Assembly (NCBI RefSeq): GCF_046119375.1
Contig: NW_027362764.1
Location: 411,122,001-411,186,000 of the forward strand
Length of the DNA stretch: 64,000 nt
Direction of reading: 5' to 3'
Origin: Phyllobates terribilis
Taxonomy: Eukaryota
The first letter of the stretch is position 1; each line of letters starts with the position of its first letter. Below are positions 1-37,760 of the stretch, piece after piece. The position numbers were made by a program, and so were the translations under genes. The notes below the pieces were generated by a model. It was given only the letters and a program-made list of their open reading frames with translations, was not told the DNA's origin and did not search any database.

Positions 1-295
1 AAAATCGGTTGCCATACTGTGGCTCTGTATGACATCCGATTTTTTTTTATACACCCATAGACTTGAATGGGTGAGTCTGATGTGATTTACAGAAGAAACT
101 AGTGTATGCGGTGATTTTTTGTCACACACAACTTCAGTCAGTGAAAAAAATTGCTCATCTGCACTGCATCATTGAATAACATTGGTATGAGTGCTGTCTG
201 TTTTTAACACGGACAGGACTTGAGTCAAAAAGAAAGAGCTCTTAGGATAAGTTAAACTTTTTAGCAATCAATTAGAACAGAATTTTCAACCTTAA

Positions 296-663
296 AGGAG
301 TATTCCCATCTCCAAGATCTTATTCCAATATGCAGTATGCGCAATAATTACAATATTAGCAAATACCTCGAATTAGAAAAGTAGTATGGTTTTTCTGATT
401 CTCTATGTCTCTTTCCTCATGTGCAGGCATTGCATGACCTTAGGTATCCATGGTTACGACCACTGATATAGTGACAGCTAGTTAGCTAGTTGCTAATGGT
501 CGTAACCATGGATACCTAAGGTCCTGCAATACCTGCACATGAGGAAAGAGACATAGAGAATCAGAAAAACCATACTACATTTCTAATTCGAGATATTTGC
601 TAATATTATAATTATTGCACCTACTACATATTGGAATAGGATCTTGGAGATGGGACTACCCCT
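296..663. mobile_element. Palindromic T2/Kolobok-type MITE
   Basis: TTAA at 292-295 and 664-667; AGG...CCT termini; near-complete internal palindrome (e.g. CCTTAGGTATCCATGGTTACGACCA / TGGTCGTAACCATGGATACCTAAGG). Confidence 0.85.
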
Positions 664-697
664 TTAAATAAGTTTAAGAGTAAAAGGTGGAGATTTA

Positions 698-2301
698 CAG
701 TGGGTGCAGAAAGTATTCAGACCCCTTTAAATGTTTCACTCTTTGTTTCATTGCAGCCATTTGGTAAATTCTAAAAAGTTCATTTTTTTCTCATTAAAGT
801 ACACTCCGCACCCCATCTTGACTGAAAAAAAACAAATGTAGAAATTTTTGCAAATTTATTCAAAAAGAAAAACTGAAATATCATATGGTCATAAGTATTC
901 AGACCCTTTGCACAGACACTCATATTTAAATCACATGCTGTCCATTTCCTTGTGATCCTCCTTGAGATGGTTTTACTCCTTCATAGGAGTCCAGCTGTGT
1001 TTAACTAAACTGATAGGACTTGATTTGGAAAGGCACACACCTGTCTATATAAGACCTCACAGCTCACAGTGCATGTCAGATCAAATGAGAATCATGAGCT
1101 CAAAGGAACTGCCCAAGGAGCTCAGAGACAGAATTGTGGCAAGGCACAGATTTGACCAAGGTTACAAAAGAATTTCTGCATTACTCAAGGTTCCTAAGAG
1201 CATAGTAGCCTCCATAATCCTTAAATGAAAGACATTTGGGACCACCAGAAGTCTTCCTGGACCTGGTCATCCAGCCAAACTGAGCAATCGTGGGAGAAGA
1301 GCCTTGGTGAGAGAGGTAAAGAAGAACCCCAAGATCACTGTAGCTGAGCTCCAGAGAAGCAGTAGGGAGATGGGAGAAAGTTCCACAAAGTCAACGATCA
1401 CTGCAGCCCTCCACCATTCGGGCTTTTATGGCAGAGTGGCCCGATGGAAGCCTCTCCTCAGTGCAAGACATATGAAAACCCGCATAGAGTTTGCTCAAAA
1501 ACACATGAAGGACTCCCAGACTATGAGAAATAAGATTCTCAGGAATGATGAGACTAAGACAGAACATTTTGGTGATAATTCTAAGCGGTATGTGTGGAGA
1601 AAACCTGGCACTGCTCATCACCTGCCCAATACAATCCCAACAGTGAAACATGGTGGTGGCAGCATCATACAATGGAGGTGTTTTTCAGCTGAGGGACAGG
1701 ACGACTGATGCAATTGAAGGAAACATGAATGCGGCCAAGTACAGAGATATCCTGCATGAAAACTTCTTCCAGAGTGCTCTGGACCTCAGACTTGGCCGAA
1801 GGTTCACCTTCCAACAAGGCAATGACCCTAAGCACACAGCTAAAATAGCAAAGGAGTAGCTTCAGAACAACTCTGTGACCATTCTTGACTAGCCCAGTCA
1901 GAGCCCTGACCTAAACCCAATTGAGCATTTCTGGAGAGACCTGAAAATGGCTGTCCACCAACATTCACCATCCAACCTGACGGAACTGGAGAGGATCCCC
2001 AAATCCAGGTGTGAAAAACTTGTTGCATCATTCCCAAGAAGACTCATGGCTGTACTAGCTTAAAAGGGTGCTTCTACTCAATACTGAGCAAAGGGTCTGA
2101 ATACTTAAGACCATGTGATATTTCAGTTTTTCCTTTTTAATACATTTGCAAAATTTTCTACATTTCTGTTTTTTTCAGTCAAGATGGGGTGCAGAGTGTA
2201 CTTTATTGAGAAAAAAATTAACTTTTTAGAATTTACCAAATGGCTGCAATGAAACAAAGAGTAAAAATTTAAGGGAGTCTGAATACTTTCCATATCTACT
2301 C
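698..2301 (+). mobile_element. Tc1-family DNA transposon, full length, transposase inactivated
   Basis: TA|CAGTGGGTGCAGAAAGTATTCAGACCC left end with a degenerate ~200-bp inverted copy at the right end followed by TA; ORF fragments MSSKELPKELRDRIV..., [31 protein letters not shown] broken by stops and frameshifts. Confidence 0.92.
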
Positions 2302-2636
2302 TATTTTCAGGTCATTCATGATGACTTGCAGCAGAAAGTTTTTTGTGGAAATTACCTTAAAATCCTTAAAACCCACTGGAAACCTATGTCAAAATCCATA
2401 TTTGTTACAAGTGGATTTTACTATGGACTTCACAATTTGCATGGCTGTGTGTCGAAACTGCAGAAATATATTCTGCATAATGGTTTACAATTTGTGAGCA
2501 AGATGTATACATTAAATGTATTCATTGTTTCTTCGGCGCCAAGAGAAGGCAATGTATAGCATCTATCAGACTAATACTTTGTTTTTTTAATGCCTGTATA
2601 ACATCTAGTACCGTATGTCTGGTGATGGGTCTAGAG

Positions 2637-4973: not shown

Positions 4974-5647
4974 ATGGTTAATATGCCCATAAATAAATCT
5001 AACAATATATAGGATCAAAACATATCCCCATGAGATTAATGAACATAGATAGGGAAAGAAAAAATCTAGAGGGGTGAGGAAGTGTATTCACCCTCACTTG
5101 CCCTACATTCCCACAAAGATTGGCACCCTAAGTTTGATATGGCGCCCCCGCTCAATGCAGACTATCCCTAAATTACCCTAAAAAGAACTAACTATCCAAA
5201 AACCACCACCATCACTAAACAATAAAGTGCTATAGTGCAGATTTGTAGGATATGTCTGGTCATATGACCCTAAGGTAGTACAAGGTCATAAACTGTAGGA
5301 ATGTGCAGAAAAATAGGATGGTCCCTATTTGAGTGAACCCTCCAAAGATATGGCAGTTTATTTGATAACTCAAATTATTGATTACAAGGCTGTAGCATAA
5401 AATACCAATAAAGCCTAATAAATCTTTGTAGCAAATATGGACACATATAATGTAGTAGCATGTACTTAATTATGATATAATTATCTTTAGAGGTATTCAC
5501 AGGCCCATACCTATGCGCTTCAAGAGATGAGGTGCAGAGTTCATCAGGGGACCTTGTGTACAGTGTCCATTTTAGAACATGATCAGATATCAAAATCAAA
5601 CATCAGAATGATGTCAGTTTGAAGATAAATACCCTGTCTGAGAACTG

Positions 5648-6066
5648 ATTTTGATAAGTGATTCTGACAAGCGATTCTGACAAGTGATTTTGATGAGTGA
5701 TTCTGACAAGTGATTTTGATGAGTGATTCTGACAAGTGATTTTTATAAGTGATTCTGACAAGTGATTTTGATGAGTGATTCTGACAAGTGATTCTGACAA
5801 GAGATTTTGATGAGTGATTCTGACAAGTGATTCTGACGAGTGATTTTGATGAGTGATTCTGACAAGTGATTTTGATGAGTGATTCTGACAAGTGATTCTG
5901 ACAAGTGATTTTGACGAGTTTTTTTTGACGAGTGATTTTGACGAGTGATTTTGACGAGTGATTTTGATTAGTGATTCAGACGAGCGATTCAGAAGAGCGA
6001 TTCTGACGAGCGATTCTGACGAGCGACTCCGACGAGCGATTCTGACGAGCGACTCTGACGAGTGAC
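5648..6066. repeat. 13-bp tandem array in left arm of foldback element
   Basis: Units GTGATTCTGACAA / GTGATTTTGATGA, grading into GCGATTCTGACGA. Confidence 0.9.
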
Positions 6067-6105
6067 TTTTACAACTGTAATAATAATAATAAAAAAAAAG
6101 TAACT

Positions 6106-6177
6106 GTTCGCTGATGGGACTTGAACCCCAAATTCTGTGTCCCAAAGCCAGTGCACTAACCACTGGTCTACAAACTC
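6106..6177 (-). ncRNA. tRNA-like Pol III cassette X (not a functional tRNA)
   Basis: Minus strand reads GTAGACCAGTGGTTAG (box A-like)...GGTTCAAGTCC (box B-like) and then an oligo-T run (A-run 6091-6099); the acceptor stem does not pair. Confidence 0.6.
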
Positions 6178-6422
6178 AGCTGTAAAAGCCTAGGAATTCT
6201 ATTTGGTTATATGATTCTCAGTGCAAACTTGCCTAAAACTCATCGGGACTTATGCACAGACTGCAAGCAAGCCAAATTCAAATGATGTTTGATTTTGATG
6301 TGTGAGTCTGATGTGTGACTTTCTTCAAACATCAGAATCAGAATCACAATGACTTTTAGTCACCCTGAGTATTTTCATGGTTGATCTCATAAGACAAGAA
6401 AGGCTGTCAGTTAGTATCACTT

Positions 6423-6486
6423 GACTGGATAGCGCAATGCTAAGGCATCATCCTCTTAAACTATTGTGTTACAAATACTGATAGGA
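6423..6486 (+). ncRNA. tRNA-like cassette Y, box B deleted
   Basis: GGATAGCGCAATGCTAAGGCATCA...; mirror of 6906-6975 but lacking the AGAGTT segment of box B; followed by a T-run at ~6498-6503. Confidence 0.4.
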
Positions 6487-6905
6487 ATAAAAAATTGTTT
6501 TTTAATTATGACTCTTTAGCACACAAACTACAGGGGTGTTTTACTTTTAATATCTGACACTCTGATTGTCATCCTGATGTGCTAAGAGTTTCAGACACGC
6601 TGTCTATTTGCATGGCCAAAGTAAATTGGGAGGCAATAACTTACTACATATCTATTTCCAAGAGACTTTACATTTGCATAATTTCTTAAAGGGGTCTAAT
6701 GATAAAATGTTTTTATTTCCATCCACCCAAGTACTGGCTGCAAACTCCCAATTTACTTTTGCTATGTAATTTACCATGCAACTAGATAGCGTGTCTGAAA
6801 CTCTTAACACATCAGGATGACAATCAGAGAGTCAGATGTTAAAAGTAAAACACCCCTGTAGTTTGTGTGCTTAATAGCCATAATAATAAAAAAAAAAAAT
6901 CTTAT

Positions 6906-6975
6906 TCCTATCAGGATTTGAACTCTTAACACTATAGTTTCAGAGGCTGATGCCTTAGCATTAAGCTATCCAGTC
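6906..6975 (-). ncRNA. tRNA-like Pol III cassette Y' (degenerate)
   Basis: Minus strand GGATAGCTTAATGCTAAGGCATCAGCCTCTGAAAC...GAGTTCAAATCC with a D-arm-like stem, a CT-CTG-AA loop and box B, followed by a long T-run. Confidence 0.55.
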
Positions 6976-7210
6976 AAGTGATAAACACTGATAGCTTTTC
7001 TTGTTTTATGAGATAAACCATGAAAATACTCAGGGTGACTAAAAGTCATTGTGATTCTGATGTTTGAAGAAAGTCACACATCAGACTCACACATTAAAAT
7101 CAAACATCATTTGAATTTGGCTTGCTTGCAGTCTGTGCATAAGTCCCAATGAGGTTTTGACAAGTTTGCACTGAAATATAACCAAATAGAACTCCTAGGT
7201 TTTCATAACT

Positions 7211-7282
7211 GAGTGTATAGCTTAGTGGTTAGTGCACTGGCTTTAGGACACAGAATTTTGGGATCAAGTCCCATCAGCGAAC
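7211..7282 (+). ncRNA. tRNA-like Pol III cassette X' (not a functional tRNA)
   Basis: TAGCTTAGTGG box A, GGATCAAGTCC imperfect box B, 11 T at 7289-7299. Confidence 0.55.
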
Positions 7283-7321
7283 AATTACTTTTTTTTTTTA
7301 TTATTATTACAGTTGTAAAAG

Positions 7322-7634
7322 TCTCTTGTCAAAGTCACTTGTCAGAATCACGTGTCAGAATCACTCATCAAAATCACTTATCAAAATCACTTGTCAAAAT
7401 CACCTGTCAGAATCACTTGTCAGAATCATTTGTCAAAATCACTTGTCAAAATCACTTGTCAGAATCACTCATCAAAATCACTCATCGAAATCACTTGTCA
7501 AAATCACTCGTCAAAATCACTTGTCAGAATCACTCATCAAAATCACTCGTCAAAATCACTCGTCAAAATCACTTGTCAGAATCACTCATCAAAATCACTC
7601 ATCAAAATCACTTGTCAGAATTACTTATCAAAAT
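7322..7634. repeat. 13-bp tandem array in right arm of foldback element
   Basis: Units TTGTCAGAATCAC / TCATCAAAATCAC, the reverse complement of the left-arm array. Confidence 0.9.
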
Positions 7635-9399
7635 CAGTTCTCAGACAGGGTATTTAGCCTCAAACTGACATCATTCTGATGTTTGATTTTGATATCTGAT
7701 CATGTCCTAAAATGGACACTGTACTTGTGTGCTTGTGTGGGAGTAGTTCCTGCAATGAGAAACCTGTCTTTCTGGCTGCGTGTATGATGGATATCAAAAG
7801 ATCTAAAGATAAGTACATCATCTTATCAATTGTTGATTTTCTGGAATTTGACCAATTTCTGATCCTTATGGATCCTTGCTATGCTAGTATCTGTACTATC
7901 TAGCGAGATGCTGTTCCTTGTGTACACCTATAGTGTATATTGCTGATCATATTTTATTTGTATTTATATTTAGAATTGGCTGGCATATTTCTGCTACTAC
8001 ATTATATGTGTTCATATTTACAACACAGATTTATTAGGCTTTATTGGTATATTATGCTACAGCCTTGTAATTAATAATTTGCGTTATAAAATAAACTGGC
8101 ATTTCATCTGAGGGTTGACTCAAATAGGTAACATTCTATTTTACTGCATATTCCTGCAGTTTATGACCTTGTATACCTTAAGGTCATTTGACCAAACATA
8201 TCCTACAATTTTTCACTTTAGTACTTTATTGTTTGGTGATGGTGGTGGTTTTAGGATAGCCTCCGGTGGTTTTCAGGATAGCCTGCATTGATTTGGGGTG
8301 CCATATCTAACTTAGGGTGCCAACCTCCGCACCAAGATAGAGCAAGTGAGGGTGAATACACTCCCCCCACCCCTCTAGATTGTCTCTTCTCCTATCTACG
8401 ATCTATCGTATGTTTATTAATCTCATGGGAAAATGTTCTTGATCCTATATATTGTTGGATACATATATGGGCATTTTAACCATATAATTAAAAGTTACAT
8501 TTTAGGAGTATTTCTTTTTGGTTATATCCACTATTATACCAGGCAAACTACATCACTGAAGATACAGGATACAGGGCAAAGGAGGACCTGATACTTTCCC
8601 TAAGAAATGCCCTACCTGACCGCGGAGGTTGACACTCTAAATAAAGCAAGCAAGATTTGGCGCCCCCGCTCACTATTGTTTTACCCTAGATGAACATAGG
8701 GAGCCCTAGGCAGAATATCCATAAATAAGGACAAAGTGACAAAGTGAAAAAATAGGTTATATGTAGTGTTGAGCGAGCATGCTCGACACTGCTCGGTACT
8801 CGCCTGAGCATCTCACTACTCGGGATGTTTGGCGAGCACCAAGCATTTCCGGGTTACTTGGGCGGGAGCTCGGGTCTCCGCCCTGCACGTTTGGCGCTCT
8901 TTACAGAGCCAATGAACATGCAGGGATTACCAGCCAGTCACTGTAATGCCACAGCCATGTTGTTTGTGGGCATTACAGTGATTGGCTGGCCGCACAGCGT
9001 CACCTCGAGTATTTAACACCGGGCGCCGCCATCTTGGACACAGTCGCCCGGGATCAGACAGTGTAGGGTCAGTGCTGCTGAGAGATATATAGTGCGAAAT
9101 AGGTAGTGTAGGGTCTCTAAAGCCTGCCAAATCAAACAAACTGTCCTTCTCAGGACTAATATCCATCCCAAATATCAGGCAGGCAGGCAGGCTTTATAGG
9201 AGACGCAGTGGTTATACCAACAAACACTGCATTACAGTCCTGTGTGCTCCTGCTGGTCAGATTGCTAGACTTATCCCCCGGTCTCAGGGGCCAGGAAAAA
9301 TCCTTTTTTTTTTTATCTAAATCCTGTATTTTTTTTTTCCTCAGTCAGAATACGTGTCTTATTAACCTATTGGTATTTCCCCCCCCACAAAAAAAAATG

Positions 9400-33599: not shown

Positions 33600-35775
33600 A
33601 GGCTGTAATCTATAGCATAGTGCAAGTATGTTTCCCCAATCAATCCTTCCGGGGTCAACTAGATTTCCCCCATTGTTGATATGCCCAACAGTGGAGATTT
33701 TTGTCAGGCTGGTATTAGAAGACTTCCGTAAAATTCTAACTAGATGTAGATTTGATAATTTAATATCAGGGCAACGTAGGGCCTTACAGGAACTACAAAC
33801 ATATGATGACATTGTAAATAAGCCGGCCGACAAAAGGAGAAATATAGTACTTTGGCCTAAACACCTGTATGAGAGGGAGGCTTTTAGACACCTCAAAGAT
33901 AAAAAAAATCGTAAATTGGAGCATAGTCCGTTAGCTGCATTCTCAACAGAATTGGAGATAATTTTATTTCAGGCACTAGAGAATGGAATTATCCCCCAAA
34001 GAATATTTGATGGTCTTCTGACAAAGTTCCCAAAAATCCCATCTATGTACTTTATACCAAAAATTCACAAAAATCCCACAGAACCGCCAGGGCATCCAAT
34101 TGTGTCCGGAATTGAGGATTTGTGCGACCCCATTTGTAAATTAATTGATTACTATTTAAAACCTATTGTGGAGGCACTGCCCTCATATGTGCGGGACACA
34201 AAGGACGACCAGGCTAGAGTCAATGATATGGGATTAAAGAGGGATATGCTTCTGGTTACCACAGACATAGAATCATTATACACATGTATTTGCCAACAAG
34301 ATGGCCTGGAAGCATGATATTTCTTCCTTAAAAGTAGTAGTTGGGATGATCATATCAGTGATCTGGTTCAGGAGCATCTGACATACATCCTAACACACAA
34401 TTTTTTTGTGTTTAGAGATGTATTCTATTTACAGCTGTGCGGCACTGCCATGGGTACTGCTTGTGCGCCTTCCTTTGCCAACCTCTTGTTAGATTTATGG
34501 GACAGGGAGGTTTTTGGTGGGGAGGGTGCCCAGGCTGCTGACCATGTGCAGTGTTGGCTACCTCATATTGACAACGAGTTTATAGTGTGGCTGGTTACCC
34601 ATCTGCAGATGCAGGAGTTTATGGGCCAATTAAGTCAGAATAGATTTACTATCAAACTAACCTATGTTTTCAGTGAATCTGAGGTGGACTTTTTGCACAT
34701 TAAAATTGAAGTGGACCCCATCGGCAATTGCAGACGGATGTCTACAGAAAGCCCACCTCAGTGAACTCACTCCTGCACGTCAGCTCGAGTCACCTGTATG
34801 CAACAATTAAGGCTTTCCAGTAGGCCAATACTTAAAGGGGTTGTCCTGTCAAAAGTGATAAGTCTGCAGTCACTCTGTGTGACTGCAGACTTATGAATCC
34901 CTCCAGCACACACACTGTGTGCTGTGGGGATTCGTCGGTTTCAGACCTGGGACCGAAGGGTATGTATAAGTTATACATACTCCCGGCCAGTGGGCTTGGC
35001 TTCGCTCTCCATAAACTTGTATTGAACAAGGCCGCGTCTTCTAATCAGACGCGCCCACTGGCCATCCGCATCGCTAGAAGGGGCATGGCCTAGCTCCATA
35101 CAAGTGTATGGAGTGAGGTGGCGCCGACTGACTGGGGGTATGTATAACTCTTACAAAGCCTCTGATCCCGGGTCTGAAACTGACGAATTCCCAGCAGTCC
35201 ACAATGCATATGCTGTGGGGATTTATAAGTCATCACAGAGTGACTGCAGACTTATTACTTTTGCCCGGAAAACCCCTTTAAGGATGCGGCATATCGGCTC
35301 CTCTGTCTCAAAATTTGAGGCACAATCAACTGATCTGGGGGAAAGATTTCAGGCTAGAGGGTATAGCAACCGGTATATAAAGCAGGAATATAATAGAGGA
35401 AAAAAAAGCAATAGAGATACATTGCTATGCCTGTTACCCAAGGTCTAGCAATACCAAAACAAAATGTGATTCATCTCAACTTACAATGGTGAGTGGAGTA
35501 CAATGAGGGAATGTCTTAAATGATATTGGAATATTTTAAAAACAGAACACAGTTTATCAAAACATCTGCCGGACCAGCAAGGGATGATTGTGAGGAGAAG
35601 CAAAAACTTGGGGGATCTCCTAACTCAAAGTCATTATGTCCCTATATATAAGAACTCTTTTGGTTCTTGAGGTCCCTTACAAGGATGCTTCCTGTGTGGC
35701 AATTGCATATCATGCAAAAATATTTGCCGCACTTCATCGTTTGAGTCAGCCATCAGACATCATATTACGTATACT
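33600..35775 (+). pseudogene. Penelope-like retroelement RT remnant with the start of a GIY-YIG region
   Basis: KPADK..., YFIPKIHKNPTEPPGHPIVSG, LVTTDIESLYT, FYLQLCGTAMGTACAPSFANL and PVGQYLRMRHI motifs; CFLCGNCISCK near 35690; many stops and frameshifts. Confidence 0.88.
34836..35277. mobile_element. T2/Kolobok-type MITE inserted in the Penelope ORF
   Basis: TTAA|AGGGG...CCCCT|TTAA; palindromic; its removal rejoins the codons PVGQYL-RMRHI. Confidence 0.88.
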
Positions 35776-35776
35776 A

Positions 35777-37398
35777 TAGTGGGTACGAAAAGTATTCAGA
35801 CCCCTTTAAATTTTTCACTCTTTGTTTCATTGCAGCCATTTGGTAAATTCTAAAAAGTTAATTTTTTCTCATTAAAGTACACTCTGCACCCCATCTTGAC
35901 TGAAAAAAAACAGAAATGTAGAAATTTTCTCACATTTATTTAAAAAGAAAAACTGAAATATCACATGGTCATAAGTATTCAGACCCTTTGCTCAGTATTG
36001 AGTAGAAGCACGCTTTTGAGCTAGTACAGCCATGAGTCTTCTTGGGAATGATGCAACAAGTTTTTCACACCTGTATTTGGGGATCCTCTGCCATTCTTCC
36101 TTGCAGATCCTCTCCAGTTCCATCAGTTTGAACGGTGAACGTTGGTGGACAGCCATTTTCAGGTCTCTCCAGAGATGCTCAATTGGGTTTCGGTCAGGGC
36201 TCTGGCTGGGTCAGTCAAGAATGGTCAAAGAGTTGTTCTGAAGCCACTCTTTTGCTATTTTAGCTGTGTGCTTAGTGTCATTGTCTTGTTGCCCTTTGGC
36301 CAAGTCTCAGGTCCAGAGCATTCTGGAAAAGGTTTTCATCCAGGATATCTCTGTATTTGGCCGCATTCATGTTTCCTTCAATTGCAACCAGTCGTCCTGT
36401 CCCTGTAGCTGAAAAACACCCCCCTAGCATGATGCTGCCACCACCATGTTTCACTGTTGGGATTGTATTGGGCAGGTGATGAGCAGTACCTGGTTTTCTC
36501 CACACATACTCTAGGAATTATCACCAAAAAGTTCTATCTTCGTCTCTTCAAACCAGAGAATCTTATTTCTCATAGTCGGGGAATCCTTCATGTGTTTTTG
36601 AGCAAACTCTATGTGGGCTTTCATATGTCTTGCACTGAGGAGAGGCTTCCGTCGGGCCACTCTGCCATAAAGGCCTGACTGGTGGAGGGCTGCAGTGGTA
36701 GTTGACTTTGTGGAACTTTCTCCCATCTCCCTACTGCATCTCTGGAGCTCAGCCACAGTGATCTTGGGGTTCTTCTTTACCTCTTTAACCAAGGCTTTTC
36801 TCCCATGATTGCTCAGTTTGGCTGGACGGCCAGGTCTAGGAAGACTTCTGGTAGTCCCAAACTTCTTCCATTTAAGGATTATGGAGGCCATTGTGCTCTT
36901 AGGAACCTTGAGTAATGCAGAAATTCTTTTGTAACCTTGGCCAGATCTGTGCCTTGCCACAATTCTGTCTCTGAGCTCCTTGGGCAGTTCCTTTGAGCTC
37001 ATGATTCTCATTTGGTCTGACAGGCATTGTGAGCTGTGAGGTCTTATATAGACAGGTGTGTGCCTTTCCAAATCAAGTCCTATCAGTTTAATTAAACACA
37101 GTTGGACTCCAATGAAGGAGTAGAACCATCTCAAGGAGGATCACAAGGAAATGGACAGCATGTGACTTAAATATGTCTGAGCAAAGGGTCTGAAAACTTA
37201 TGACCATGTGATATTTCAGTTTTTCTTTTTTAATAAATTTGCAAAAATTTCTACATTTAAGTTTTTTTCAGTCAAGATGGTGTGGTGCAGAGTGTACTTT
37301 AATGAGTAAAAAATTAACTTTTTCGAATTTACCAAATGACTGCAATGAAATAAAGAGTCAAAAATTTAAAGGGGTCTGAATATTTTCCGTACCCACTG
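35777..37398 (-). mobile_element. Tc1-family transposon (same family as 698-2301), transposase broken
   Basis: TA-flanked ~200-bp TIRs (xAGTGGGTACG...CGTACCCACTG); ORF 36511-37134 with paired-like HTH, then [14 protein letters not shown] and QSPDRNPIEH fragments. Confidence 0.92.
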
Positions 37399-37760
37399 TA
37401 TTTTAAAGCATTCCCCAGGGAGGCAATCTGCTCCAGAGGCACAGTCATTAGGCTCCTATTAAAGAGCCTCTTCCAACTCCTTCACTGTGATTGGCCTGTC
37501 ATGCAAAGTCCCTTCAGCACCTGTCAATCTAGGAATACGTATTTTCAATAAAAACCCTGTTTCCTCTTTACCCATATAGAAGTGTATGCATTTTAAAAGA
37601 GTATTCATTACTTGTAGCATATTTTTGTTATGCATAAATAATTCCCACTACCATCCTTAGAACCTATTTTATTGGATAGCCCCTCTTTGGCTTGAATTAT
37701 TGCAGTCAGCAAATGACCTGTCTTTTCTTTCTCCTAATAAATATATCTTTTAAAAACATA

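What the first reader, a model, noticed from the sequence alone, without database searches (positions are those of the whole stretch)
6090..7300. Four tRNA-like Pol III cassettes with terminators built into the arms of a DNA transposon
Seen: each arm has two divergent ~70-nt tRNA-like units. X and X' point outward and Y and Y' converge on the spacer. X, X' and Y' show box A, box B and an immediate oligo-T run followed by ATTATT; Y has lost box B. Acceptor stems do not pair, and there is no SINE body or separate TSD. X and Y look paralogous. Inference: a DNA transposon carrying self-contained Pol III units or TFIIIC sites, which could yield small RNAs or spread insulator-like sites. This is the most unusual architecture in the window.
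Basis: partly seen in the sequence, partly recalled or inferred. Interest (0 to 1): 0.82.

Follow-up and report, generated by a model that had tools for sequence, protein, structure and literature searches.

The report
Foldback transposon carrying tRNA-like promoter units
This is one worn copy of a very abundant frog cut-and-paste transposon, with no gene of its own, whose mirror-image arms each carry two tRNA-derived RNA polymerase III-type units; the layout is real and unusual, but nothing here shows that the units are used.

Summary
Four ~75-nt tRNA-like units lie at 6091-6177(-), 6423-6503(+), 6888-6975(-) and 7211-7299(+). X and X' point outward; Y and Y' point toward the centre. A-box to B-box spacing is 43-44 nt, and a T-run plus ATTATT follows 14-17 nt after box B. 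A relaxed A-box/B-box/T5 pattern hits three times in the 64 kb, all here (0.05 expected).

The units sit in a 2,161-bp element (5561-7721) with TA target duplications, CAGTG termini, 13-bp tandem arrays in both arms and no real ORF. That makes it a non-autonomous foldback element of Tc1/mariner type. The family is very abundant: 2,631 contigs of one DNA run align to it, and coded organism B also carries it.

Most copies carry canonical boxes in X-type and Y-type units and a long T-run at Y. This copy has a lesion in every unit, and Y's missing box B is a deletion absent from two other copies.

The units are not tRNA genes and not separate SINE insertions. Between the arms they are no better conserved (89%) than the rest (92-93%). 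No unit-sized RNA signal was seen, though the data could not have shown one.

Most likely they are tRNA-gene-derived cargo of the family founder, able to recruit Pol III or TFIIIC in young copies but untested. The scan noted two other copies with the same four units elsewhere in this genome.

The parts
5559..5560 (.). TA target-site duplication, left
   Evidence: TA directly before CAGTG
5561..5645 (+). Left terminal inverted repeat, starting CAGTGTCCATTTTAG
   Evidence: Mirror of 7637-7721; arms 91% complementary
5646..6077 (.). Left array, about 32 copies of a 13-bp unit
   Evidence: Tandem Repeats Finder and the repeat finder
6081..6099 (-). T9 terminator-like run plus ATTATTATTA after X (read on the minus strand)
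6100..6177 (-). Unit X, tRNA-like, pointing outward. A box 6160-6170 (two changes private to this copy), B box 6117-6127
   Evidence: family-majority letters at 6166 and 6167
6178..6422 (.). Inter-unit segment with a small hairpin (6277-6335) that resembles the terminal motif. This is the best-conserved and most abundant part of the family
6423..6503 (+). Unit Y, pointing to the centre. A box 6430-6440; B box removed by a deletion at about 6473-6477; T6 at 6498-6503
   Evidence: Contigs of two other copies carry GTTC and C there, and the majority letter at 6497 gives T9
6504..6880 (.). Inner inverted repeat with a central loop of about 100 nt (about 6641-6744)
   Evidence: Arm alignment
6881..6975 (-). 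Unit Y', pointing to the centre. A box 6958-6968, B box 6914-6924, T12 at 6888-6899, ATTATTA at 6881-6887
6976..7210 (.). Right inter-unit segment, mirror of 6178-6422
7211..7309 (+). Unit X', pointing outward. A box 7218-7228, B box 7261-7271 (T to A, private to this copy), T11 at 7289-7299, ATTATTATTA at 7300-7309
7313..7636 (.). Right array, about 25 copies of the 13-bp unit
7637..7721 (-). Right terminal inverted repeat
7722..7723 (.). TA target-site duplication, right

Best explanation
Positions 5561-7721 are one old copy of a very high-copy, non-autonomous foldback DNA transposon of Tc1/mariner type in a frog genome.

**How it moves (inferred).** A Tc1-like transposase supplied from elsewhere cuts and pastes it, recognising the CAGTG termini and probably the 13-bp subterminal arrays.

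**Where the units come from (inferred).** The family founder had acquired two tRNA-gene-derived units, each with its own A box, B box and T-run terminator. X is Pro(TGG)-like; Y is more degenerate and possibly a paralogue of X. Formation of the palindrome doubled them to four.

**What the units do.**
- They travel as cargo.
- In family-majority form each has everything a type 2 Pol III promoter needs and would give an RNA of about 80-85 nt ending in the T-run. Young copies are therefore plausible TFIIIC/Pol III sites, as SINE heads and tRNA pseudogenes are.
- In this copy all four are damaged and are decaying at least as fast as the rest of the element. Nothing indicates that they are selected or needed for transposition.

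**Shown:** the anatomy, the multicopy status, the family-majority letters and the lack of extra conservation. **Inferred:** the capture, the transposase partner and any Pol III activity.
For: **Transposon identity**
- TA|CAGTG...CACTG|TA ends, with the 20-mer terminus found only at the two ends.
- Arms 91-92% complementary, with arrays of 32 and 25 x 13 bp.
- The only ORFs are tandem-repeat artefacts.

**Family**
- 2,631 contigs of DNA run X1 align, and contigs of organism B include pieces with no mismatch. A run of organism C holds a tenth of the sampled words.
- Majority letters restore the boxes: TAGCTCAGTGG in X and X' (6166/6167, 7223), GGTTCAAGTCC in X' (7263) and AATGG in Y and Y' (6440, 6958). 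The majority letter at 6497 gives Y a T9. Contigs of two other copies carry Y's B box (GTTC after 6473).

**Units**
- Box spacing of 43-44 nt, and a T-run 14-17 nt after box B.
- The composite pattern occurs only here in 64 kb.
- ARAGORN at the 80% threshold calls X a Pro(TGG)-like cloverleaf.

**No sign of selection**
- Units 89% identical between arms against 92-93% elsewhere, with differences inside the boxes.

**Other copies**
- Earlier scan notes report copies of 2,496 and 1,552 nt with the same four modules. I did not check these.
Against: - No autonomous partner was identified. The Tc1 transposase copies in the window share only TACAGTG with these termini.
- No parental tRNA gene could be looked for, so capture is an inference.
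- The per-site test across copies could not be done. Only 40 of 201 variable sites were listed, and no other copy could be fetched.
- A majority sequence with intact boxes is expected for any young family and says nothing about selection either way.
- X and Y both keep their boxes and terminator while the rest diverged to about 55% identity. That could reflect past selection for promoter function.
Confidence: 0.7

Rival explanations
1. The four units are working, selected parts of the transposon or of the host. On this view intact copies recruit TFIIIC and Pol III. That would keep chromatin open for the transposase, create insulator-like sites, or make about 80-nt RNAs or RNA fragments that affect silencing. 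The family would owe part of its success to them.
For: - Family-majority units have canonical A and B boxes at tRNA spacing and long T-runs placed 6 nt or so after the tRNA-like 3' end.
- X-type and Y-type units both kept boxes and terminator while acceptor and anticodon stems decayed.
- The four-unit layout recurs in copies of different length, according to unchecked scan notes.
Against: - The units are no better conserved between arms than their surroundings, and the boxes are hit in all four units of this copy.
- The most conserved and abundant segment is the inter-unit piece, not the units.
- RNA-library contigs cover the element diffusely, run through the T-runs and show no pile-up of ends.
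- None of the listed RNA runs holds this copy's X' words.
- These libraries would not capture 80-nt RNAs, so this evidence is weak.
Confidence: 0.12
2. The composite is nested. On this view an inner palindromic piece (about 6080-7307), bounded by A-rich and T-rich tails and carrying the units, was inserted at a central TA of an older foldback MITE built only of termini and 13-bp arrays. The units would then belong to a different mobile unit from the outer arms.
For: - TA lies on both sides, at 6078-6079 and 7308-7309, next to CAACTG and CAGTTG.
- Contigs of other copies stop matching at 7208 and 7309, so the X' module behaves as a block (tables 7 and 8).
- A motif like the outer terminus recurs at 6277-6338 (families D5 and D7).
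Against: - The symmetry of the junctions follows from the palindrome itself.
- The inner ends are not CAGT-type termini.
- Breaks at 7309 are explained by array variation between copies.
- Other noted copies keep the whole layout.
Confidence: 0.12
3. The units are heads of a tRNA-derived SINE that were retroposed independently into the arms.
For: The 5' half of X is a common SINE-head sequence. Its 21-mer recurs exactly in SINE-like repeats on four metagenome contigs, probably of invertebrate hosts, followed there by a different body.
Against: - There is no SINE body, no A-rich or LINE-type tail and no flanking direct repeats. A T-run follows instead.
- The units lie at mirror positions in both arms.
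- Summed depth is lower over the units than over the neighbouring sequence, so they are not part of a more abundant separate family.
Confidence: 0.04

Closest known systems
Foldback-type DNA transposons with tandem repeats in long arms (Drosophila FB, Galileo, Tetris; PMC3688188, PMC4079207)
   Same: Long mirror arms built largely of short tandem subrepeats, a tiny centre, no coding capacity, and copy length varying with the arrays.
   Different: The ends and target duplication here are Tc1/mariner type (TA, CAGTG), not P or MULE type. The arms also hold tRNA-like Pol III-type units.
MER6/MER6A, a Tc1/mariner MITE containing a V-SINE piece (PMC6887750)
   Same: A non-autonomous Tc1/mariner element that spread a SINE-related sequence by DNA transposition.
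   Different: MER6 carries the SINE body and tail without the tRNA-related head. Here only the promoter-bearing tRNA-like part plus a terminator is carried, four times, in a palindrome.
Pack-TIR elements, including multicopy frog cases and Ssk-FB4 (PMC8277862)
   Same: A TIR or foldback transposon that captured host sequence and amplified it by repeated transposition.
   Different: The Pack-TIRs the paper describes are mostly fragments of protein-coding genes at one to a few copies; a search of its text found no mention of tRNA. Here the cargo is a small-RNA-gene-like unit at very high copy, and the parental locus was not identified.
tRNA-derived SINE heads, tRNA pseudogenes and extra TFIIIC sites (established knowledge of Pol III type 2 promoters)
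   Same: A and B boxes at tRNA spacing, degenerate cloverleaf, dispersal in thousands of copies, and potential TFIIIC binding.
   Different: Dispersal is by cut-and-paste DNA transposition, not retroposition. An immediate T-run makes each unit self-terminating.
Dada transposons that target tRNA and snRNA genes (PMC3706591, PMC8869645)
   Same: A DNA transposon physically associated with tRNA-type sequences.
   Different: As I recall the family (only the abstracts were read here), Dada copies are flanked by the halves of the small-RNA gene they split. Here the units are whole and internal, and the flanks are a TA in TG-rich sequence.

Membership tests
Tc1/mariner-type non-autonomous transposon | TA target-site duplication | tested here: met
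   TA at 5559-5560 and 7722-7723
Tc1/mariner-type non-autonomous transposon | Terminal inverted repeats starting CAGT, as in Tc1-like elements | tested here: met
   CAGTGTCCATTTTAG at both ends, with one mismatch in 20. Tc1 copies in the window start TACAGTGGGTGC
Tc1/mariner-type non-autonomous transposon | An autonomous partner with matching ends and a DDE transposase | tested here: inconclusive
   Not in this window. The genome could not be searched
Tc1/mariner-type non-autonomous transposon | Many dispersed copies | tested here: met
   2,631 contigs of one DNA run align, with many different loose-end contexts
Foldback element | Arms form a long inverted repeat made largely of tandem subrepeats, with a short centre | tested here: met
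tRNA gene | Cloverleaf scoring above the curated covariance-model threshold | tested here: not met
   Rfam tRNA model: X' scores 16.3 bits against a gathering score of 29; no tRNA match for X or Y' in separate scans, nor for Y in the 2.6-kb scan. ARAGORN default finds none. Minimum-free-energy folds are not cloverleaves
tRNA-derived SINE | Head plus body plus A-rich or LINE-type tail, flanked by target duplications | tested here: not met
   Only the head-like part is present, followed by a T-run. No direct repeats flank it
Pol III type 2 transcription unit | A box and B box 30-60 nt apart, and a run of four or more T downstream | tested here: met
   Met in family-majority form. In this copy every unit has one box lesion or deletion
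Pol III type 2 transcription unit | TFIIIC or Pol III occupancy, or a discrete RNA product | not testable with these tools
   Only contigs of ordinary libraries were available. Coverage is diffuse with no end pile-ups, and listed RNA runs hold none of this copy's X' words
Pack-TIR (captured host sequence) | An identifiable parental locus outside the transposon | not testable with these tools
   No access to the rest of the genome
Dada | Insertion inside a small-RNA gene, with the gene halves flanking the element | tested here: not met
   The flanks are TA in TG-rich sequence, and the units are internal and whole

The most novel reading that the evidence does not exclude
The master copies of this family keep their four tRNA-like genes active. 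TFIIIC or Pol III loading on the arms, or the ~80-nt RNAs made, would then help the transposon to be mobilised or to escape silencing. On that reading a cut-and-paste transposon, rather than a SINE, has seeded thousands of Pol III/TFIIIC sites across a giant frog genome.
Probability: 0.08. Interest if true: 0.8.

Novelty: new variant of a known kind. Interest (0 to 1): 0.4.

Why it matters
Dispersed Pol III promoters and TFIIIC sites in vertebrates are normally credited to retroposed SINEs. If young copies of this family bind TFIIIC or are transcribed, a DNA transposon would be a second route for spreading such sites, up to four per insertion, in a genome already swollen by Tc1/mariner elements (PMC6278860).

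As it stands, the finding is a well-defined structural curiosity. It is a useful family to annotate so that its units are not miscalled as tRNA pseudogenes or SINEs.

Tried and rejected
**Fetching other copies for the conservation test. All routes failed.**
- BLAST of the element against the rest of the window found nothing.
- An exact-word scan of metagenome contigs with the X 21-mer gave four unrelated SINE-like repeats.
- Viral and prokaryote-genome scans found nothing.
- Two protein searches used the pseudo-ORF through X' as bait. One found nothing. The other gave three weak hits; the best of them, the only one looked up, lies in an unrelated 13-bp-array repeat, L005.

**Other tests**
- Rfam on single units gave only noise-level hits.
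- An old nested palindrome between X and Y is not significant outside the units (z about 3.3).
- Literature searches found no description of this architecture.

**Left out**
- From memory, Y resembles tRNA-Gln(CTG). No reference tRNA was available to test this, so it is not claimed.

Full report
**1. The observation**

Reading 5700-7700 and aligning the four candidate units confirms the layout.
- X lies on the minus strand at about 6091-6177 and X' on the plus strand at 7211-7299. Both read toward the element ends.
- Y lies on the plus strand at 6423-6503 and Y' on the minus strand at 6888-6975. Both read toward the centre.

Exact positions of the motifs:

| Unit | A box | B box | T-run | ATT tail |
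|---|---|---|---|---|
| X | TAGACCAGTGG, 6160-6170 | GGTTCAAGTCC, 6117-6127 | T9, 6091-6099 | ATTATTATTA, 6081-6090 |
| X' | TAGCTTAGTGG, 7218-7228 | GGATCAAGTCC, 7261-7271 | T11, 7289-7299 | ATTATTATTA, 7300-7309 |
| Y' | TAGCTTAATGC, 6958-6968 | AGTTCAAATCC, 6914-6924 | T12, 6888-6899 | ATTATTA, 6881-6887 |
| Y | TAGCGCAATGC, 6430-6440 | absent | T6, 6498-6503 | none |

- A-box to B-box start spacing is 43, 43 and 44 nt. In a tRNA gene it is 44 (position 8 to position 52).
- The T-run starts 14-17 nt after box B.
- A relaxed A-box / 25-45 nt / B-box / 8-30 nt / T5 pattern hits three times in the 64-kb window, all in this element. Random sequence of the same composition gives 0.05 hits.
- X and Y' align with z = 8.7 against shuffles. 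Part of that score is the shared T-run and ATTATT.

**2. How tRNA-like are the units?**

Less than the boxes suggest.
- ARAGORN at default settings finds no tRNA in the window.
- The Rfam tRNA model gives only 16.3 bits for X', against a gathering score of 29. It gives nothing for X or Y' even when each is scanned alone, and nothing for Y in the 2.6-kb scan.
- Minimum-free-energy folds are not cloverleaves, and their z-scores of -0.5 to -1.35 are unremarkable.
- With its threshold lowered to 80%, ARAGORN draws X as a Pro(TGG)-like cloverleaf with a six-pair acceptor stem that includes two G-U pairs.

The units are tRNA-derived sequences at the level of SINE heads or old pseudogenes.

**3. What carries them**

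- The ends read TA|CAGTGTCCATTTTAG...CTAAAATGGACACTG|TA. The 20-mer terminus occurs only at these two places in the window.
- Each arm consists of about 85 nt of terminal sequence, then a 13-bp tandem array (32 copies on the left, 25 on the right), then X, then a 245-nt inter-unit segment, then Y.
- An inner inverted repeat closes on a loop of about 100 nt.
- The only ORFs are artefacts of the tandem repeats.

This is a non-autonomous foldback element with Tc1/mariner-type ends and TA duplication, 2,161 bp long. Another note of this scan said the same for this stretch. Two Tc1 transposase copies in the window (about 696-2303 and 35770-37405) share only TACAGTG with these termini. They are not shown to be the partner.

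**4. The family**

Earlier notes place the genome in a poison-frog-like frog and list two other copies, 2,496 and 1,552 nt long, each said to have four tRNA-like modules. I did not check those notes.

I laid Logan contigs of four runs on 6040-7340.
- 2,631 contigs of one DNA run align, with summed word depths in the thousands to tens of thousands.
- Contigs of coded organism B also align, including pieces with no mismatch. A run of organism C holds a tenth of the sampled words.

The letters that most contigs carry differ from this copy exactly where its boxes look imperfect:
- 6166 G>A and 6167 T>G, and 7223 T>C, give TAGCTCAGTGG in X and X'.
- 7263 A>T gives GGTTCAAGTCC in X'.
- 6440 C>G and 6958 G>C give AATGG in Y and Y'.
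- 6497 G>T gives Y a T9.
- Contigs of two other copies have GTTC and C inserted after 6473 and 6477, which restores a B box in Y.

So the family-majority form has canonical boxes and long terminators in X-type and Y-type units. This copy has at least one lesion in each unit, and Y's missing box B is a deletion that those two copies lack.

**5. Are the boxes protected?**

The data available lean to no.
- Between the two arms of this copy, the X-type units are 89.0% identical and the Y-type units 89.2%. The inter-unit segment is 92.0% identical and the inner stem 93.1%. Arm differences fall inside the boxes.
- Of the 40 best-supported departures of this copy from the family majority, 19 lie in the roughly 325 nt of the units and 21 in the roughly 870 nt of the rest (my count, table 3).
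- The segment with the highest summed depth, which also matches contigs of two runs without any mismatch, is 6245-6396, between X and Y.

A true per-site diversity test across copies could not be run. Only 40 of 201 variable sites were listed, and no other copy could be fetched.

**6. RNA**

- Contigs from RNA-labelled runs cover the whole element thinly. They run through the T-runs and show no pile-up of starts or ends.
- The listed RNA runs hold none of the exact words of this copy's X'.
- These libraries would not capture 80-nt Pol III products and may contain DNA. This is absence of evidence only.

**7. Rivals**

- **Independent SINE insertions.** These are excluded in practice. There is no body, no A-rich tail and no flanking repeats, and the units lie at mirror positions. 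The 21-mer of X's 5' half does recur exactly in SINE-like repeats on four metagenome contigs, where a different body follows it. That shows this head type is widespread, not that a SINE landed here.
- **Nested origin.** An inner palindrome carrying the units might have been inserted at a central TA of an array-only foldback element. The TA junctions at 6078-6079 and 7308-7309, and contig breaks at 7208 and 7309, allow this. The symmetry is a by-product of the palindrome, so it stays a minor possibility.
- **Selected Pol III or TFIIIC function.** This remains possible for young or master copies. X-type and Y-type units kept boxes and terminators while their stems decayed.

**8. Comparison with known systems**

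- The element works like a foldback or MITE-type transposon with cargo.
- Closest precedents are Drosophila FB, Galileo and Tetris for the arms (PMC3688188, PMC4079207). MER6 is the precedent for a Tc1/mariner MITE carrying SINE-derived sequence, but it lacks the tRNA head (PMC6887750). Pack-TIRs, including multicopy frog cases and Ssk-FB4, are the precedent for capture and spread (PMC8277862).
- Dada elements are associated with tRNA genes as targets, which is a different relation (PMC3706591).
- Seven full-text searches found no description of a Tc1/mariner-type foldback family carrying self-terminating tRNA-like units. The strawberry poison frog genome paper mentions tRNAs only in its list of repeat classes, and does not mention SINEs or MITEs.

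**9. Verdict**

The structure is real and the family is huge. The reading as four Pol III-type cassettes built into a DNA transposon is right as anatomy and untested as function. I rate it a new variant of known kinds, of moderate interest. The decisive work is genome-wide copy analysis plus Pol III/TFIIIC occupancy and RNA assays at the right size range.

Noticed in passing
window 696-2303 and 35770-37405: Two Tc1-like elements with about 200-bp structured inverted ends starting TACAGTGGGTGCAGAAAG. Their transposase coding sequence happens to contain strict A-box matches at 1429 and 36667.
   Followed up: partly
window 292-667: A 171-nt inverted repeat, 94% complementary, with a 34-nt spacer. 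It looks like a hairpin or MITE-like element beside the first Tc1 copy.
   Followed up: no
window 6268-6329: In runs X11 (organism A) and X14 (organism B), contigs match only this 62-nt piece and continue on both sides into 219-255 nt of unrelated, near-identical sequence. The piece may lie in a conserved locus or transcript, or the element may have taken it from one.
   Followed up: no
L003:2360-2470 (metagenome contig Ga0056132_1001291): A SINE-like repeat whose tRNA-like head shares 22 nt exactly with X. A stretch follows that, from memory, resembles the 3' part of 5S rRNA. It probably comes from an invertebrate host.
   Followed up: no
L005:477-802 (JGI contig Ga0620613_0154165): An unrelated G+C-rich repeat with 13-bp tandem units (CCGAGTCACCTAT) in two opposed blocks. 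The foldback-with-13-mer-array layout is similar to this element's arms.
   Followed up: no
window 5551-5560 and 7722-7740: The insertion site lies in a TG-rich, CTTGTG-type low-complexity tract. CTTGTG precedes the left TA and follows the right TA.
   Followed up: no
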